64,000 nucleotides of DNA from Guillardia theta CCMP2712 (lineage: Eukaryota > Protista > Cryptophyta), in assembly GCF_000315625.1 (NCBI RefSeq), contig NW_005434643.1:1-64000 (forward strand), read 5' to 3'. Below are positions 36,161 through 43,805 of the stretch, in pieces (position 1 is the first letter of the stretch; each line of letters begins with the position of its first letter). A program made the position numbers and the translations under genes. The notes below the pieces were generated by a model. That model searched no databases. It was given only the letters and a program-made list of their open reading frames with translations, and was not told where the DNA came from.

Positions 36161-37266
36161 TTTGACCAGGCTCAGTGATTTTTACTCAAAGTTAAGTTAA
36201 AAATGATAGTGACTGGCCTAAATCCGAATCCGATGATCAGGGATATGCTGAAATATTGTCGGATATTTTGAAAATTTGAGTGATTTGACACTCAAATTCG
36301 TTTCGACTCCTCGCAGTATATATATTAAAAGTAAACTTTTAAAACTTGTACCAATACGCTAGCCAGTGCAATAATACCGTCGAGTCGATAATAAATGTTT
36401 TTAATTATAAGAGTTTTTATTCGGAGTAGATTCCGTCGCTTTGTAGTTCGAAGGTTGCAATATCACAACGTTTGGTGATGGAGGCCGGATGAGATTGTAT
36501 GAGGTTCGGTGAGCCCCAGCGACCCCTGCTTGAGTATAAACTCTTGAAGGGATATAGTCAAATGGATGTAATAATTTTGACAGTCCGCGCATGAATCCAA
36601 TCTTCTCCAATCAAATCTTCAAAATGCCCTCATTTTGTCAAATTTACATATTCAATTATGACTGTTGAGCGTAAAATGTGTTTGATGTAGCACCTCTTGC
36701 GCAAAATCTCTTTTTCCGAAGACCCCCTCTTCTGACCGATTTTTCGTAAATCGGGGGTCCAAAATCACACACCGGTTGTAGTCAACTTTTAAGTCAAATC
36801 TAGTCTACTTTAGAATCATTCTTGCTAAAATCAGCTGATTCTACTTGCTTTTCGTTTAACCAACCGCGCGACGGTCGCATCGTCATGGCGCGAGAAGAGG
36901 ATAGGATCTAGGCGGAGGATTTATGAGGCTGGAAGAAGGAAATGGCTGAAGTTTGGTCAACCTGACAAAGAATCTGTCTTCCTCCTGACTTAGTCTCTTC
37001 TCGTGGATGATTGTGCGCATGAAATATGATTGAGAGTCCGAAGATATGGCCAGTTGCAACCCTTGAAATGAGATTACGCTAGGACCTGGCAAGACTTAGA
37101 GTTTGCATACAGATGTAGTGAGTCCACTTGAATTGCAGTGGACATCTTAGACCTCTTATTACGCTGATTGACTGACGATTTTTCTGAGCAGTTTTACTGT
37201 TGAAATATCACCTGCAGCTTGACGCAGTTTGCTACTCTGTGAAGTCGAATCGGACAGACCACGGAA

Positions 37267-40200
37267 ATGTCCAGTTCATCTCAGGAATTCATGTCGGCTC
37301 GAGCCAGACAGCTGCAGGCAGATGTGCTTGTGCATGAAGTTTATGAATCTGGTGGTTCAAACATGTCCAATGAGTCCTTTGGAAGCAGCGACAGCGATTT
37401 CAGGTTCATTCCCAATGAAGCAGAAATGGAGCACTATGCGAGAGTTCTTAATAACCCTGGGCAGATCATGCCTCATGGAGTATTTCTTCTTGTAGATGAG
37501 TCTGACAAGTTGAAGATCAAAGCTGCCAGCTCAAACACAGACAGCATTCTTGGATGGCCTTGCGAGGAGTTGCTGGGAAGAGCTATGCTGGATCTGTTTG
37601 AAGAGAAGCAGCGAATCGAGACGGCTCTCGTAGCCAAGAGCCTTGATCTGGTGAACCCCATCACTGTGAACATTGCCAAGAGGACCGATGATGACATTGG
37701 AGGAACGGTAAATCTCATCATGCACAGGGCTGCGGACGGCCTCGTCGTTGACGTCGAGCAACTGGACCCTTCCGAGAATGCCTTCGCTGCGCATCAGCGT
37801 GTGCGTGCTGCTATCGATCGTCTGAATATGATGGACAGCCAGCAGAAGCTATGCGAGCAGGTTTGCAATGACTTCTTCGACATCTTCGGCTACGACAGGG
37901 TCATGGTGTACTATTTCCATGAAGACTGCCATGGGGAAGTCGTTGCTGAAAGGACCGTTGAAAATCTTGATGACTCGTATCTTGGTTTGCACTATCCTGC
38001 TACCGATCTTCCGCAGCGCATTCGTGACCAGTACAAGTCTGAGCATGTCAGATTGATTATGGACAGCAATGCTAACCATTCGGACATTATCATGCTAGAC
38101 AAGAGTAAATCGTCAAGCACCATATCTTTGGGTGGTTCTACACTTCGAAGAGCGCACAAGTGCCATTTGGAGTATTTGAACAACATGGGTGTTACAGCAT
38201 CAATCGGTCTTGCTCTCGTAGTGAAGGATCAATTGTGGGGACTGATCATTGGTCACCACATGTCTCCCAAATTCGTTTCCTATCAGATGCGAATGGCAGG
38301 AGATTTCTTGGCCCAGGCGTTTTCTATGCGTGTGGCAAATTTGCTTGACCTTGAGGTGAAAATATGATCATGCGTCAAATCTTCTAATTCAACTTTGAAC
38401 AGGCTCACAAAAGGCATGATAGGAACCTTGAATTGCATGCCAAACTTTGTGACATCATGAGCGAGCAAGGAATGAATCCCGGCTTGCGGCTCAAGGGTCT
38501 TGTGTCTTCTGCGCCAAATCTGATGGATCTTGTTCCTGGAGTGTCCGGAGCTGCAGTTAGCTACCAGGGCAGAATCACCTCAGTTGGTCAGACACCCGGG
38601 CAGGTGACATTTCTTGGCGGAAAAGGTTTCTTGCATGTTTTGTTTACTTTGTTTGCAGACTTCCATCCGAATGATTTTGAATGCCGTACAAGCAAGGTGG
38701 ATGAATTCTTCTGACGGCAAACAAGTGAGATCCCTCTGATCTACCCTTGTGTTGCTTTGTTAAAAGTTGTTCCTTGTCAGGTCTGCTGCTGGGATAAGAT
38801 GTCCGATTTGAGCGAGTCCTTTGAAACGTTTTCAAACATTGCAGCTGGTGTTCTGTTGGTTCCTGTCCTCGAAGATGGAGTTTTGATGCTTTTCCGTCCT
38901 GAACTCTCGACGACGATCAGATGGGCCGGTAACCCTGCAGCCCCTGCTTCGCGTGAAAAGAAGACAGGTGTGATCCTTGTGTCTCTCTTGCCAGGAGCCT
39001 CACTTCTTGCTCAGGTGCTATGCATCCTCGTGCATCTTTTGAAATCTTCTCGGATGCAGTGAAAGGACAATGCGCACCTTGGCTGAAGTGGCAGGTTGAT
39101 GCTGCGTCCGGCCTTGGATTGCTTGTCAACGACCTTGGACGTGGCAGCGATCTTCCTGGAACCGATTTGCTCGAGCGTGTAGCTGATGCTCAAATGAAGA
39201 ACAAAACAGAAGCAAGCTCTGCACGTACTGAAATGATTCACTTGATGGATTCCGTGAAAGCCCCAGTCTTCGGTTTGGATTGCGACCTTCGAATCGTCCA
39301 ATGGAACAACATGTGTGTGCAGTTGACCGGGTTTACCAAGGAGGAAGCGATGGGAAAGAACTTGCTTGATTTGGTCCCCAAAAAGCTGCAAGAATCTCTC
39401 CAATCTGTTCTTAAGCATGCACTCCGTGGGGAACAAGTTCGTGCGTACGAGTTCAGCATCTCAAAGGCGCGTGCTTCGGAGCTTCCTGTGATAGCTCGCC
39501 AGGTCGACCTGTTGTTGAACGCATCCGGAAAGTATGATACCAATGGAGTCTGCACGGGAGTGAACTGTGTTTGCCAAGACATCACTATGCAGAAGATGTC
39601 CAAGGGCAAGCAGGAAGTTCTTGGGGCTCAGTTGGAGCAGATTTCTAAGCTTGCCATTCAAATGCAACCGAATGGATTCGATGCCACTGAATCACAATTT
39701 GAGTTCATGCCAAACAAAGAAGACGCTCTGCTGGGAGAAGGCGCGTTCGGAAAGACTTATAGAATGAAAAATACGATTGATGACATGGCATATGCTGTCA
39801 AAATGATCAACGTGAAGAAGCTGCAGAGAAATGGAATGTCTGTGCAGTCTTTGAAGAGAGAAGTTCAGATGCTTCTGCAGTTGAATTCCGCATACATTGT
39901 TCGTTATTACACATGCTTCATGCGCAAGAACGGCAAGTATTTCTGTATTGTGATGGAGTTGGCTGCTGGTGGAACACTGTCCGAGCTAGTAAAAAAGCGA
40001 AGAGCTGGAGAAGTACCTGAGGAGCGTATACGTATGTTGGCGCACCAGATGGCCAACGCTCTGGCGCATATTCATTCCAAGAAGATGCTGCATAGGGATT
40101 TGAAACCAGACAACGTGCTGTTGTCAGGAGATGGTTTGGAGATCAAGGTGATTGTCAGAATTAACCCTGATCTGTGTCGTGATGTGATGTAGGTAACGGA

Positions 40201-41621
40201 CTTTGGTTTGGCTTGTGTTGCATCTTCTGCTGGAGCAAACTCCAGAGCTGGTACTTTGACGTATTCCTCGCCGGAGAAAGCAGGATCCAAGGTGAAAACC
40301 ACGTTTTTTAGCTAGCTGCGTGTAAGCCCTGGTTTGCAGGGTTACGACAGCAAGGATGATATCTGGGCGCTCGGCTGTATTCTGGTGGAACTGATCACTG
40401 GCGTTCCACTTGGAGCTCGATGTGCTGGAGGAGTCTTTGCATTCAACAAGGAGCTCATTGCACGAACAATCGCTGAATGCAAACAGGAAAGTCAACGGTT
40501 GGGCTCTGTAGTCGAGATGTTGCTCAGCCTGCAGCCCAACTCGCGTCCTTCAGCTGAGGAAGTTGCAGTCATGCTGGAGACCAAGAGGTCCACGAGAGTG
40601 ACCAAAGAGGAAGCTGAGGAGTTCTGCGAGGAGTACCTCTGCTCGATCTGTCAGAGCTTGGTGGTGGATGCTCATACTATGTGTGAGGATGACCACGTGT
40701 TTTGTGGCATCTGTTTGAAGCAATGGCTGAAGACCAAGCAAGTGTGTCCTACTTGCCGTAAGCCTTCAACCCACATCCGCAGGCAGAAGATTGTCAACAA
40801 TGTCGCAGAGAAGCTTGCGCAGAAGTTCCTCAGTCCGGAAGAGCTGGAAGAAAGGAAGGAGAAGCAAAAGGCCTCTGAAGTAGCTATGGCTGAAGAAGCC
40901 ACTCGTGTGCGAAACGAGCTCTCAGAAAGCTCTAGGGGTGCTGGCCAAGTTCCCTGGGTGTATCGTTCTGGCGTTGCACAACTTGGAAGTGGCTGTACTT
41001 TGCTCCTGCATCCTGGAACAGGCGCATTGGTTGAACTCTTCCACATAAATGGATGGTTTCGATTCCGTGCGGATAGAAATGCGGAGCCTCGTTGGTGCAA
41101 CAGCTGCTGTATCATCGGTGAAAGTGACTTTGGAGCTCCTGATATCGTGGAAGTATTGGATGCTGGCCAGGTTTGACCAGAGGCCTTCTGAGTGCCCGAC
41201 TTTCTTCTGACTTGTTTCTGGTTGGTGAACACCAGGGTCGAAATGTTCCGTATGATGGCATCGAAGACTTGAACCAGAGTGACTTCTGGACCTCGAGGGT
41301 TCGATCCTCCAAGGTGAAACAAAGAAGGGAGTGGGTGACGACGATGGTTGACCAAGATGTAGGTCGTGCTCTCCAATGCTGACGAGGAGACGCTAATCCT
41401 CCTCCCTGAGGGAGGTCTCATCTGGCTTTCTCACTACGGCATGGACAAGGTTGTATGGTCCCTTGCTGTGTGATTGGCTTGCTAACTCCTCATCTCTTCC
41501 TTCCCCCCACTTACTTCCCTTTCCTCCCTCTCAGGGCCTAGTTGTCAAGTCATCACTCTCCGCCTCCCAGGACTCCAGTGCTATCGAGGTTGCAAAACAA
41601 GTGAAGAAAGTCCGCCCCTGA
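37267..41621 (+). CDS. PEK: Phytochrome-eukaryotic kinase hybrid: NTE-PAS-GAF-PHY-PAS-Ser/Thr kinase-RING(C3HC4)-coiled coil-unknown C-terminal domain
   Basis: Photosensor: GQIMPHG, GYDRVMVYYFHEDCHGEVVAE, YLGLHYPATDLP, LRRAHKCHLEYLNNMGV (GAF bilin Cys), LWGLIIGHH, WAGNP and MHPRASF. PAS: IVQWN...LTGFTKEEAMGK. Kinase: GEGAFG, AVK, HRDLKPDN, DFG, GTLTYSSPE and DIWALG. RING: CSIC-x10-C-x3-H-x2-C-x2-C-x10-CPTC. Confidence 0.95.
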
Positions 41622-41942
41622 AATCTCCGCAGGTCATGACCAGAGACGCCGCGCGTTCCATGCTCGGAGGCGATGTTGACGCACTGCTGATGAGGTGACC
41701 ACACCAATAGATCCATAGCTACTTGTTTAGCCTCGTGTAGAGAATCTAAGTTGCGAGAGTTTCTTACTTTGGTATTCCGTTTCAGCACTCAATCTGGCTA
41801 GGCTGGCAAGAGGAACATGAAATGATGACTTGATTGCTTCAGCATCAAGCTCGTAACTTTTGCTTGCTGTTTGTAACGTTTGCATAGTACACCTATCCTG
41901 TAGAGATCCTAGCCTCCCTCTACTCCTGGCAACATGTCTCCA

Positions 41943-43805
41943 TCAGTTGGCATCCTTAGTTTTCCTGTCATCACATTCAATCGCTGCAACGACAAAAGTG
42001 ATAATGTACAACTTGTGCTGGTCGTGCTGAGCGCGCAGGTCCTGCAAGAACAAGAGGAGCCGCCGACGTTCTCCCAGCCGTTCAATTCCCAACTCCTGCA
42101 CACAAGTCAGAGGGAGGGAGGGAGTTAGAGCAAGGGGGGAGGGAGGGAGGTAGCCAAAGGAAAGGGGAAGGGAGGAAGGGGAGAGAAAATTGCAGGAGGT
42201 GGGGGTACCGTCTTGATCTCCTCCTCGTCGTCCTCCGTCAGTGTAAGCGCGACCCTGCCGTCGATCTTGGACTTTTGAATCGCTTCCACACAACCTGCGA
42301 TGCTCCATCAAGGGAAGAGGCTCCGAAGAGAGGTCCCACCTGCAAGGTCCGCCTTCTCAAGCATGTAGCAGAGATCGTCCGTGCTCCAGTCTGCCGGGTT
42401 TTGGCTGGAGAGGAGAGTGAGGAAGACGGCAGAAGAGGAGCGAACTCTGCTAACCTAGGCGCAGGCCGCATGCTGTATTTCTTCTCCCAATCCTGCGATG
42501 GCCAAATTTTGTCAGGAGGGAGGACACGAGGCAGGGCCAGCAATAAAGATGAAAATGCATTATGAAACATCGAGGCAGAGTGGCAGACAGAAGGAGGGAA
42601 CTGGGAACGAACGTGATGATGGCAAGGGATGGAGGAGGTGGAGAAGGACTGCACCTGCAACGCAAGTTTTCGAGCCTCCTCCTCGTCATAGGTGAGGCTC
42701 TTTGACTCCCCTGGGCTGGTGCTGACACTAGCCTCGTCCAACCGGAGAGAGGAGCTGGTCTTGCTGAAGGCAGCCTTGAGCCGCTCCTTCTCCTTTGTCC
42801 AACCCCACAAGGCGATGGCGAAAGCTGCTGCTGAGACCGTCAGCTTCAGCGCCATGTAAGGGGTCGCCGTTGTGCTCTCCACAATCACATTGACAGGCCC
42901 CTTGATAACGAAGGGGTTGGGGACGATGTCAAGGAACTGCGAGGCGAACATGTCGGGGAGGAGAGGACGAAATACAGGATCGAGGAAGAGTGGACGGAGG
43001 GGGTCGAGAATCTGGATCGTCTTCACCACCTGCAACATGGTCAGAGACGACGGGAGGAGGGACAAGCAGCCACCTCGAAGGTCTTGGCTGGAACCATCGC
43101 CACCCACGCGTTGAAGAAAGGGAGGAGAGAGGCCACGAGAAGGCCCAGGAGCGAGCGGGCCCGAGGAAAGTAGGCGATCATGGAGGCGACCAGGGCCGTG
43201 AGGGCCGTGAGGAAAGAGGAGATTGTCCCTAAGAGGACCGGCTGAAAGAATGCAAGGCCGGCACCGAGGAACATGGAAGCTGGTGTAAGACAGACGGCGA
43301 GCATGTTGAACATGAGCACGGTCACAGCAGTTGCTGCGGAGAGCGCGATCCAAGCTGAGGATGCGATGGGGTACACAGCCATGCAGACGAGGAGGATGAG
43401 GACAAGCTTCTTGGGGGAGTCGGGCGTCACCCTCCTCACCATGGCTGCCACCCTCTCCCTCCTCTCCGTGAGCCTTGCTATCCTCGCTGGCATCTTCTCA
43501 ATCATCTTGCTCATCTTCCTTGAGATCTTCGACTCCAGTCGCTCCATCCTGGCAGCAAGACGTTGACGCTTCCTCTCCGCCTTGTCCTTGAAACGCTGAA
43601 GACCAGGAGCAGGCTCGGGGCTGGACAACTCGTCAACCATATGGAGCAAGCAAACTGTTGGGGAGGTTCTGCGACTTCGATCCATCGGAAGGCTCGAAGG
43701 TGATGAAGAGAGAAGAGACGATCTTGCAAGGAAAAGACCAGGTTGGAAGCCATCCACTAGCGCCAGGCCAGCGATGAGACACCAGGTTCTTATGGCTCCT
43801 GACAT
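41943..43805 (-). CDS. Plastid-targeted multi-pass membrane protein with C-terminal SAM domain, multi-exon
   Basis: Signal MSGAIRTWCLIAGLALVDG-F plus a Ser/Arg-rich transit peptide and several hydrophobic helices. The spliced C-terminus NPADWSTDDLCYMLEKADLA/GCVEAIQKSKIDGRVALTLTEDDEEEIKT/ELGIERLGERRRLLLFLQDLR matches the SAM consensus. Confidence 0.78.

What the first reader, a model, noticed from the sequence alone, without database searches (positions are those of the whole stretch)
37267..41621. One-polypeptide light-sensor / kinase / ubiquitin-ligase: phytochrome-PAS-kinase-RING
Seen: a complete plant-type photosensory core (N-terminal extension, GAF Cys in AHKCH, PRxSF tongue) is fused to one PAS, an intact RD-type Ser/Thr kinase (GEGAFG, K, HRD, DFG, SPE) and a full C3HC4 RING, with no histidine-kinase module. 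Established: cryptophyte phytochrome-eukaryotic kinase hybrids (PEK) are known as an architecture, but I know of no demonstrated output mechanism. Inference: light could gate both phosphorylation and ubiquitination within one chain, collapsing the multi-protein plant phytochrome/kinase/E3 logic. This would also be an attractive optogenetic scaffold.
Basis: partly seen in the sequence, partly recalled or inferred. Interest (0 to 1): 0.75.

Follow-up and report, generated by a model that had tools for sequence, protein, structure and literature searches.

The report
Known cryptophyte phytochrome-kinase-RING gene (PEK)
This is a real, expressed gene of the alga Guillardia theta that joins a phytochrome light sensor, a Ser/Thr kinase and a RING ubiquitin-ligase finger in one 1300-residue protein; the fusion type (PEK) is already published but biochemically untested, and I add that it ends in a conserved, so far unnamed domain with a tandem polo-box-like fold.

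Summary
Transcript contigs from several studies splice the region into one mRNA.

- **Gene model:** 12 exons, CDS 37267-41801, 1300 codons.
- **RING fusion:** the RING lies in the same exon (40340-41170) as the kinase C-lobe, so this fusion does not depend on any splice call.
- **3' end:** Five more short exons follow exon 7.
- **Genome:** it matches Guillardia theta CCMP2712.
- **Prior literature:** Li et al. 2015 list three G. theta "PEK" genes and draw PKC and RING domains for cryptophyte phytochromes. A 2026 review still says nothing is known of their light sensing. The architecture is therefore already known and its function is open.
- **Earlier scan finding:** the scan found the same fusion on other DNA of this genome (s1-435495). 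I matched that note to the contig C33 paralogue by its description, not by coordinates.
- **Conservation:** the whole architecture, with all eight RING ligands and all kinase motifs, is kept in relatives that share only 45-50% identity, including Hemiselmis andersenii.
- **Caveat:** the genome shows only two bilin-reductase loci, so the chromophore is uncertain.

The parts
37190..41801 (+). Whole gene. The transcript contig starts at 37190, the ATG is at 37267 and the stop (TAG) at 41799-41801. The CDS has 12 exons and 1300 codons. Exons: 37267-38355, 38403-38603, 38659-38724, 38781-38967, 39015-40147, 40193-40291, 40340-41170, 41236-41313, 41363-41449, 41535-41588, 41633-41694, 41786-41801. 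The 3' UTR runs on to about 41960-42047.
   Evidence: Junctions in transcript contigs X1 and X9 and raw reads X19, all GT..AG with introns of 44-91 nt; none in DNA run X12. Reading frames checked on the sequence. Exons are collinear with the Hemiselmis andersenii protein P0003.
37267..37446 (+). Ser-rich N-terminal extension (aa 1-60).
   Evidence: Aligns from residue 4 to plant phytochrome B residues 49 onward.
37447..37758 (+). PAS_2 domain of the photosensory core.
   Evidence: Pfam PF08446, 2e-16.
37843..38316 (+). GAF (bilin lyase) domain. The attachment Cys299 is at 38161-38163, inside HKCH. The YPATDLP motif lies upstream.
   Evidence: Pfam PF01590, 3.5e-11. PDB phmmer: best match 9jry at 2.6e-51 and phytochrome B at 5.7e-49, with the Cys-His pair aligned in the printed 9jry alignment. 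Motifs.
38403..39121 (+). PHY domain over exons 2-5. Tongue motifs: WAG at 38922-38930 and PRASF at 39026-39040.
   Evidence: Pfam PF00360 hits in three exon pieces; motifs.
39236..39583 (+). Single PAS domain, followed by a ~45-aa linker to the kinase.
   Evidence: Pfam PF00989, 3.7e-15.
39725..40564 (+). Ser/Thr protein kinase domain over exons 5-7. G-loop GEGAFG; Lys at 39800-39802; HRD Asp at 40097-40099; DFG at 40199-40207; SPE.
   Evidence: Pfam PF00069, 1.8e-31 and 3.4e-07; motifs. Nearest solved kinases are GCN2, NEK1/7, PKR, Aurora and CDPK.
40640..40756 (+). C3HC4 RING finger, in the same exon as the kinase C-lobe.
   Evidence: Pfam zf-RING_2, zf-C3HC4_2 and zf-C3HC4 above cut-off. 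The eight ligands are kept in every aligned relative that covers them. Nearest solved RINGs are BMI1/RING1B, RNF4, RNF8, RNF168 and COP1.
40757..40933 (+). Conserved post-RING helix motif, then a charged linker of variable length (probably helical).
   Evidence: Alignment A1. The BMI1 alignment extends past the RING.
40934..41694 (+). Conserved C-terminal domain over exons 7-11 with a tandem polo-box-like fold. It has no Pfam family.

Best explanation
This is one of the three published phytochrome-eukaryotic-kinase hybrid (PEK) genes of Guillardia theta.

**Shown**
- It is a single expressed 12-exon gene.
- Its 1300-aa product reads: N-terminal extension, PAS-GAF-PHY bilin photosensory core, one PAS, a Ser/Thr kinase with every catalytic motif, a complete C3HC4 RING, a charged linker, and a conserved C-terminal domain with a tandem polo-box-like fold.
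- The whole arrangement is kept across cryptophyte relatives of about 45-50% identity.

**Inferred mechanism**
- The protein acts as a dimer, like other phytochromes.
- A bilin on Cys299 photoisomerises and the PRASF tongue refolds.
- The change passes along the PHY-PAS helical spine and the PAS-kinase linker, and switches the kinase (comparable to LOV-J-alpha-kinase in phototropin).
- The C-terminal domain docks partners or mediates self-association, as polo boxes do in PLK1 and PLK4.
- The RING recruits an E2~ubiquitin, so that docked or phosphorylated targets, or the receptor itself, are ubiquitinated.

**My odds for the parts**
| Claim | Odds |
|---|---|
| Real single gene and protein | 0.97 |
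| Binds a bilin | 0.8 |
| Active kinase | 0.8 |
| Active E3 | 0.6 |
| Both outputs depend on light | 0.4-0.5 |
For: - One mRNA: a single 3971-nt transcript contig covers sensor to C-terminal domain with precise GT..AG intron removal. A DNA run has no junctions. Raw RNA reads of an independent 2026 library cover the 3' end.
- The RING and the kinase C-lobe share exon 40340-41170.
- All photosensory, kinase and RING motifs are intact.
- Relatives keep the same domain order. P0003 (Hemiselmis andersenii) and P0005 show all six domains. P0004 (lacks PAS_2), P0002 (no PAS_2, GAF or PAS hit) and P0151 (N-terminally truncated) are partial models.
- The RING ligands and a post-RING motif are invariant or nearly so.
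- RING residues usually used for E2 contact are present in the window copy: Ile in CSIC, Trp in QWL, Pro in CPTC, and Arg after the last Cys (read).
- The C-terminal domain is the most conserved part after the RING. Its two halves map in order onto polo boxes 1 and 2.
- Literature: PEK class, G. theta PEK1-3, and PKC and RING in the domain drawings (PMC4525182; PMC13150293).
Against: - No biochemistry exists for any PEK. The 2026 review states nothing is known of cryptophyte phytochrome light sensing.
- The genome shows only two ferredoxin-dependent bilin reductase loci, which fits the published PEBA and PEBB. By established knowledge their products, 15,16-dihydrobiliverdin and phycoerythrobilin, lack the C15=C16 double bond needed for photoisomerisation. 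There is also no N-terminal Cys for biliverdin.
- By motif comparison the Plk1 His/Lys phosphate-binding position appears to be acidic here, so a phospho-reader role is not supported.
- In the P0151/P0009 subclade the RING lacks the Trp and the Arg.
- The RING homodimer prediction gave no verdict.
Confidence: 0.55

Rival explanations
1. The protein is a bilin sensor or constitutive scaffold, not a light switch. In vivo it carries phycoerythrobilin or 15,16-dihydrobiliverdin (or no bilin), cannot photoconvert, and its kinase/RING output reports bilin or plastid status instead of light.
For: Only two FDBR loci are detected in the genome, matching the published GtPEBA and GtPEBB. Established knowledge: phycoerythrobilin adducts of apophytochromes are fluorescent and photo-inert. 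An earlier scan note describes a 'blind' phytochrome relative in this genome, and I saw a degenerate Cys region in the C17 paralogue.
Against: This copy keeps the residues tied to photoconversion, not just to binding: the DIP-type Asp, the Tyr and His around the bilin, and both tongue motifs. The FDBR count is a lower bound from an exon-by-exon search. Reductase activity cannot be read from sequence.
Confidence: 0.2
2. The kinase is the only signalling output. The RING is a structural or dimerising zinc module, or serves only to destroy the receptor itself after activation (as light-labile phytochrome A is destroyed), not to ubiquitinate substrates.
For: RING domains closest in sequence (BMI1/RING1B, RNF4, RNF8) work as dimers, and BMI1 itself is a non-catalytic partner. 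A subclade (P0151, P0009) lacks the Trp and the Arg after the last Cys that active RINGs often use.
Against: All eight ligands, the Ile and the Pro are invariant or nearly so across the family, and the window copy keeps Trp and Arg. A conserved docking-type domain follows the RING, which suits substrate selection.
Confidence: 0.2
3. The fusion is an artefact: two neighbouring genes (a phytochrome-kinase and a RING protein) joined by mis-assembly or read-through.
For: Logan contigs are assemblies of short reads, and the RNA label of X1 and X9 is a guess.
Against: The kinase C-lobe and the RING lie in one uninterrupted exon. One contig carries ten precise junctions, which a DNA run lacks. A Hemiselmis andersenii transcriptome protein (its cluster member P0152 is an MMETSP transcript) and several metagenomic proteins have the same collinear order.
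Confidence: 0.02

Closest known systems
Cryptophyte phytochrome-eukaryotic kinase hybrids (PEK; Duanmu et al. 2014; Li et al. 2015, PMC4525182)
   Same: Same organism, same class: PAS-GAF-PHY, a single PAS and a Ser/Thr kinase in place of PAS-PAS-histidine kinase, and a RING in the published drawings. Li et al. list G. theta PEK1-3, and this genome holds three such loci (C31 = this window, C33, C17).
   Different: Nothing in kind. I add a transcript-verified 12-exon model and the description of the C-terminal domain. I could not tell which of PEK1-3 this locus is.
Plant phytochrome with COP1/SPA and PIF partners
   Same: A bilin photosensory core of the plant type (GAF Cys, N-terminal extension, tongue). 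The overall logic links light, phosphorylation and RING-dependent ubiquitination. COP1's RING is among the sequence matches.
   Different: In plants these are separate proteins, and the phytochrome C-terminus is PAS-PAS plus a histidine-kinase-related domain. Here a bona fide eukaryotic kinase and a RING are in the same chain.
Polo-like kinases (PLK1 polo-box domain; PLK4 cryptic polo box and PB3)
   Same: A Ser/Thr kinase followed by a C-terminal pair of six-strand-plus-helix units. Model box 1 aligns to Plk1 PB1 and box 2 to PB2 in order, and box 2 also aligns to PLK4 PB3.
   Different: No sequence-level similarity. The kinase is not PLK-like by sequence. A RING and a linker lie between kinase and boxes. 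The relative orientation of the boxes differs (rmsd ~8 Å when both are aligned). The phosphate-binding His/Lys is not evidently kept.
RNF8/CHFR-type FHA-RING ligases
   Same: Next-tier sequence hits to the RING and its flanks include FHA-RING proteins (P0049 and P0059) and RNF8. Both combine a docking module with a dimer-type RING.
   Different: No FHA domain here. The docking module is C-terminal and of another fold. The kinase and photosensor are additional.
Phototropin/neochrome and the Ceratodon phytochrome with a kinase-like C-terminus
   Same: A photosensor fused through a PAS-type domain and a linker to a eukaryotic protein kinase (Li et al. 2015 discuss independent recruitments).
   Different: Independent fusions with other kinase families, and no RING.

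Membership tests
Phytochrome (PAS-GAF-PHY photosensory core) | PAS_2, GAF and PHY domains in this order | tested here: met
   Pfam hits in exons 1, 2, 4 and 5. PDB phmmer gives phytochrome B at 5.7e-49.
Phytochrome (PAS-GAF-PHY photosensory core) | Bilin-attachment Cys in the GAF domain, followed by His | tested here: met
   HKCH with Cys299, aligned to the Cys-His of the best solved match, 9jry.
Phytochrome (PAS-GAF-PHY photosensory core) | DIP-type Asp and tongue motifs W(G/A)G and PRxSF | tested here: met
   YPATDLP, WAG and PRASF.
Phytochrome (PAS-GAF-PHY photosensory core) | Covalent bilin binding and reversible photoconversion | not testable with these tools
   Needs holoprotein spectroscopy. 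Only two FDBR loci are seen in the genome.
PEK (phytochrome-eukaryotic kinase hybrid) | Cryptophyte phytochrome with a single PAS and a Ser/Thr kinase instead of PAS-PAS-histidine kinase | tested here: met
   One PAS, Pkinase, and no HisKA or HATPase_c. The genome matches G. theta CCMP2712: 87.1 Mb in 669 contigs, and the paralogue's protein is EKX45806.1 on a 675,464-bp contig.
Active eukaryotic protein kinase | G-loop, VAIK Lys, HRD, DFG and APE-type motifs | tested here: met
   GEGAFG, YAVK, HRDLKPDN, DFG and SPE. Activity itself was not tested.
RING-type E3 ligase (C3HC4) | Eight Zn ligands with canonical spacing | tested here: met
   Pfam above cut-off. The pattern is present in the window and kept in every aligned relative that covers it.
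RING-type E3 ligase (C3HC4) | E2-dependent ubiquitin transfer | not testable with these tools
   E2-contact-type residues are present by inspection only.
Polo-box domain | Two six-stranded sheet plus helix units in tandem | tested here: inconclusive
Polo-box domain | Match to the Pfam POLO_box profile or to a PLK polo-box sequence | tested here: not met
   No Pfam hit in 13 members at E up to 10. The genome search finds only the two canonical PLK loci. hhalign probability is 0.1.
Histidine-kinase output module of canonical phytochromes | HisKA and HATPase_c domains after the PAS region | tested here: not met
   No such Pfam hit in any exon.

The most novel reading that the evidence does not exclude
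PEKs are self-contained light-gated 'write, dock, tag' machines. The kinase marks a target, a previously unrecognised and very divergent polo-box pair docks it (or sets the dimer geometry), and the RING ubiquitinates it. This would be the first polo-box-type domain outside polo-like and kinetoplastid kinetochore kinases, and a single-chain light-controlled E3 ligase usable in optogenetics.
Probability: 0.12. Interest if true: 0.8.

Novelty: already known. Interest (0 to 1): 0.4.

Why it matters
If PEKs really couple a bilin photoswitch to a kinase and an E3 ligase in one chain, they would be a compact natural counterpart of the plant phytochrome/PIF/COP1 circuit and a ready scaffold for light-controlled protein degradation. 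The architecture has been drawn in papers since 2014, but no spectrum, kinase assay or ubiquitination assay exists. The useful output here is practical:

- a transcript-verified coding model (1300 aa, 12 exons) for cloning;
- evidence that the RING and a further C-terminal docking-type domain are under selection;
- a warning that the native chromophore is unclear.

Tried and rejected
- **Joined protein left out.** Pfam and structure searches of the window's own full-length spliced protein were not done. I searched exon by exon and used full-length relatives returned by the database (P0003, P0005, P0151 and others) as stand-ins.
- **Sequence searches of the C-terminal domain.** Pfam on the window's exon pieces and on 13 family members gave nothing meaningful. 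A profile search of PDB sequences gave one chance hit at E 1.7. hhalign against G. theta's own PLK polo-box region gave probability 0.1.
- **Protein-atlas feature search.** It pointed weakly (0.75-0.78) at fascin/FRG1 beta-trefoils. The structure model did not bear this out.
- **RING homodimer.** The prediction for the RING plus post-RING helix scored 0.02, which is no verdict either way.
- **Is the kinase PLK-like?** No. The nearest solved kinases are GCN2, NEK, PKR, Aurora and CDPK. The G. theta PLK kinase ranks far down among paralogues.
- **Is there a stand-alone kinase-RING ancestor in the genome?** The closest kinase paralogue (C12, 45% identity) has no RING.
- **Original PEK papers.** Duanmu 2014 and Rockwell 2014 are not held in the library. 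Prior knowledge rests on Li 2015 and a 2026 review.
- **Large word-index protein search.** Not used, because it was not needed.
Full report
**Observation.**
- Pfam on the pieces gives PAS_2 (2e-16) and GAF (3.5e-11) in exon 1, PHY in three pieces, one PAS (3.7e-15), Pkinase in two pieces (1.8e-31 and 3.4e-07) and C3HC4 RING models above their cut-offs.
- Motif reading on the translated exons shows HKCH (Cys299), YPATDLP, WAG, PRASF, GEGAFG, YAVK, HRDLKPDN, DFG, SPE and a complete eight-ligand RING.
- No histidine-kinase family matches any exon.

**Gene model.** I derived splice sites from the sequence and then laid public runs on 36700-42400.
- One 3971-nt contig of run X1 starts at 37190 and carries ten GT..AG junctions. 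Contigs of X9 carry the same ones.
- An eleventh junction (41694|41786) is in an X9 contig and in raw reads of X19, a 2026 library on record as RNA-seq whose reads cover the gene's 3' end.
- The DNA run X12 covers the region without any junction.
- The CDS is 37267-41801: 12 exons, 3900 nt, 1300 codons, introns of 44-91 nt.
- The kinase C-lobe (subdomains IX-XI) and the RING lie in one exon (40340-41170). The kinase-RING fusion therefore needs no splice call at all.
Exons 8-12 were missed.
- If intron 11 is retained, the protein ends four residues earlier (the last five residues replaced by a single Arg), so the result barely changes.

The whole-protein Pfam or fold step on the window's own product is left out. 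Full-length relatives from the database stand in for it.

**Which organism and gene.**
- The window's assembly has 87.1 Mb in 669 contigs.
- A paralogue on contig C33 (675,464 bp) is the database protein EKX45806.1, GUITHDRAFT_163142, of Guillardia theta CCMP2712.
- The genome holds this locus (C31), a collinear paralogue on C33, a third photosensor-plus-kinase locus on C17, a PAS-PAS type phytochrome on C49 and a divergent one on C66.
- Li et al. 2015 (PMC4525182) list "Guillardia theta 1, 2" and "PEK1, PEK2, PEK3" in their supplement. They describe cryptophyte phytochromes with a single PAS and a Ser/Thr kinase, and name PKC and RING in the figure legends.
- A 2026 review (PMC13150293) again lists kinase and RING in its domain figure and states that nothing is yet known about cryptophyte phytochrome light sensing.
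- The two original papers are not held.
- An earlier agent of this scan reached the same verdict on a PEK gene on another piece of this genome (s1-435495). By its description this is most likely the C33 paralogue.

**Conservation.** A full HMMER scan of 1.84 billion representatives with exon 7 found 12 proteins below 1e-30, at 45-52% identity over the whole exon.
- Of the long relatives, P0003 (Hemiselmis andersenii, 1307 aa) and P0005 (1319 aa) show PAS_2-GAF-PHY-PAS-Pkinase-RING in full. P0004 (1151 aa) lacks only the PAS_2 hit. P0002 shows only PHY, Pkinase and RING.
- The window's exons map onto them in order, including exons 8 and 9. The tail of exons 10-12 resembles that of P0151 and P0009.
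- In the alignment from the RING to the end (A1) the eight RING ligands are invariant or nearly so. A post-RING motif is invariant.
- The last domain holds many invariant residues, including Trp, His and a WCNSC motif.
- Kinase motifs are intact in nearly all members that cover them; the HRD pattern was not matched in P0003.
- The next tier of hits are ordinary RING proteins, two of them FHA-RING.
- The closest G. theta kinase paralogue has no RING.

**The C-terminal domain.** It has no Pfam match and no PDB sequence match.
- An AlphaFold2 model of the closest homologue's domain (P0151:769-941, 13-row alignment) is confident: pLDDT 89.3, pTM 0.87. It consists of six strands plus a helix, twice.
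- Nearly all of the top 50 Foldseek hits are Plk1 or Cdc5 polo-box domains: probability above 0.9, but E about 1e-3 and TM about 0.3.
- With both boxes aligned together the rmsd is about 8 Å, so the boxes are packed differently.
- The ESM Atlas search gives its highest TM (0.42-0.44) to POLO_box clusters.
- Against this, every score is below the tools' 'clear' range, and sequence-level tests are negative.

I read it as a tandem polo-box-like fold (about 0.6). I make no claim of phosphopeptide binding. By motif comparison the Plk1 His/Lys position appears acidic here. That comparison is my inference, not a residue-level structural alignment.

**Mechanism.**
- Shown: one chain with an intact sensor, kinase, RING and a conserved end domain, expressed and under selection.
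- Inferred, from established knowledge of phytochromes, phototropins and dimeric RINGs: a dimeric bilin photoreceptor. Tongue refolding is relayed through the PHY-PAS spine and the ~45-residue PAS-kinase linker to the kinase. The end domain docks partners or fixes the dimer. The RING brings in E2~ubiquitin. The RING's closest solved relatives are BMI1/RING1B, RNF4, RNF8, RNF168 and COP1.
- The dimer prediction for the RING piece gave no verdict.

**Main caveat.** The genome search finds only two ferredoxin-dependent bilin reductase loci, which fits the published GtPEBA and GtPEBB. Their products cannot isomerise at C15. The protein also has no N-terminal Cys for biliverdin. Either another route to a switchable bilin exists, or the protein senses bilin rather than light. 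The full set of photoconversion residues in this copy favours the former.

**Verdict.** This is a correct reading of a real gene. The class and its RING are already published, and this very genome was their source. Function remains untested. The new points are the verified 12-exon model, the family-wide conservation of the RING, and the polo-box-like C-terminal domain.

Noticed in passing
window 41786-43353, - strand: A convergent gene on the minus strand overlaps the PEK 3' UTR. Its introns (CT..AC on the + strand) lie at about 41964-42011, 42095-42207 and 42293-42337. Its contig depth is about eight times that of PEK in run X1. One X9 contig bridges both genes through the overlap.
   Followed up: partly
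G000:C33:~207877-215640 (L028, L025): A second PEK with the same domain order but many more, smaller exons. The annotated protein EKX45806.1 (P0002, 1155 aa) lacks the PAS_2 and GAF hits and the Cys motif, although the genome encodes them (Cys kept, split by an intron). The public model therefore looks incomplete.
   Followed up: partly
G000:C17:~95733-98668 (L023), - strand: A third photosensor-plus-kinase locus. Only the kinase N-lobe is detectable, no RING was found, the region around the bilin Cys is degenerate, and assembly gaps lie nearby.
   Followed up: partly
G000:C29:28575-33914, C78:398552-401584, C154:68581-71640: Very long open frames (2908, 2040 and 1543 aa) made of many tandem PAS domains, each 30-39% identical to the PEK's PAS.
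   Followed up: no
G000:C69:366568-367548 and C85:33635-33954: These are the only two ferredoxin-dependent bilin reductase loci detected in the genome. This raises the question of which bilin the five phytochrome-type genes use.
   Followed up: partly
window 41503 and 36722: The DNA run X12 differs from the window by a 1-nt deletion in intron 9 and a 1-nt insertion upstream of the gene. Both are non-coding.
   Followed up: no
C-terminal domain, window 40934-41170 (alignments A1, A2): One Cys, two His and a CxxC are invariant or nearly so in the first box-like half. They might form a metal site, which polo boxes do not have. I could not inspect the model coordinates.
   Followed up: no
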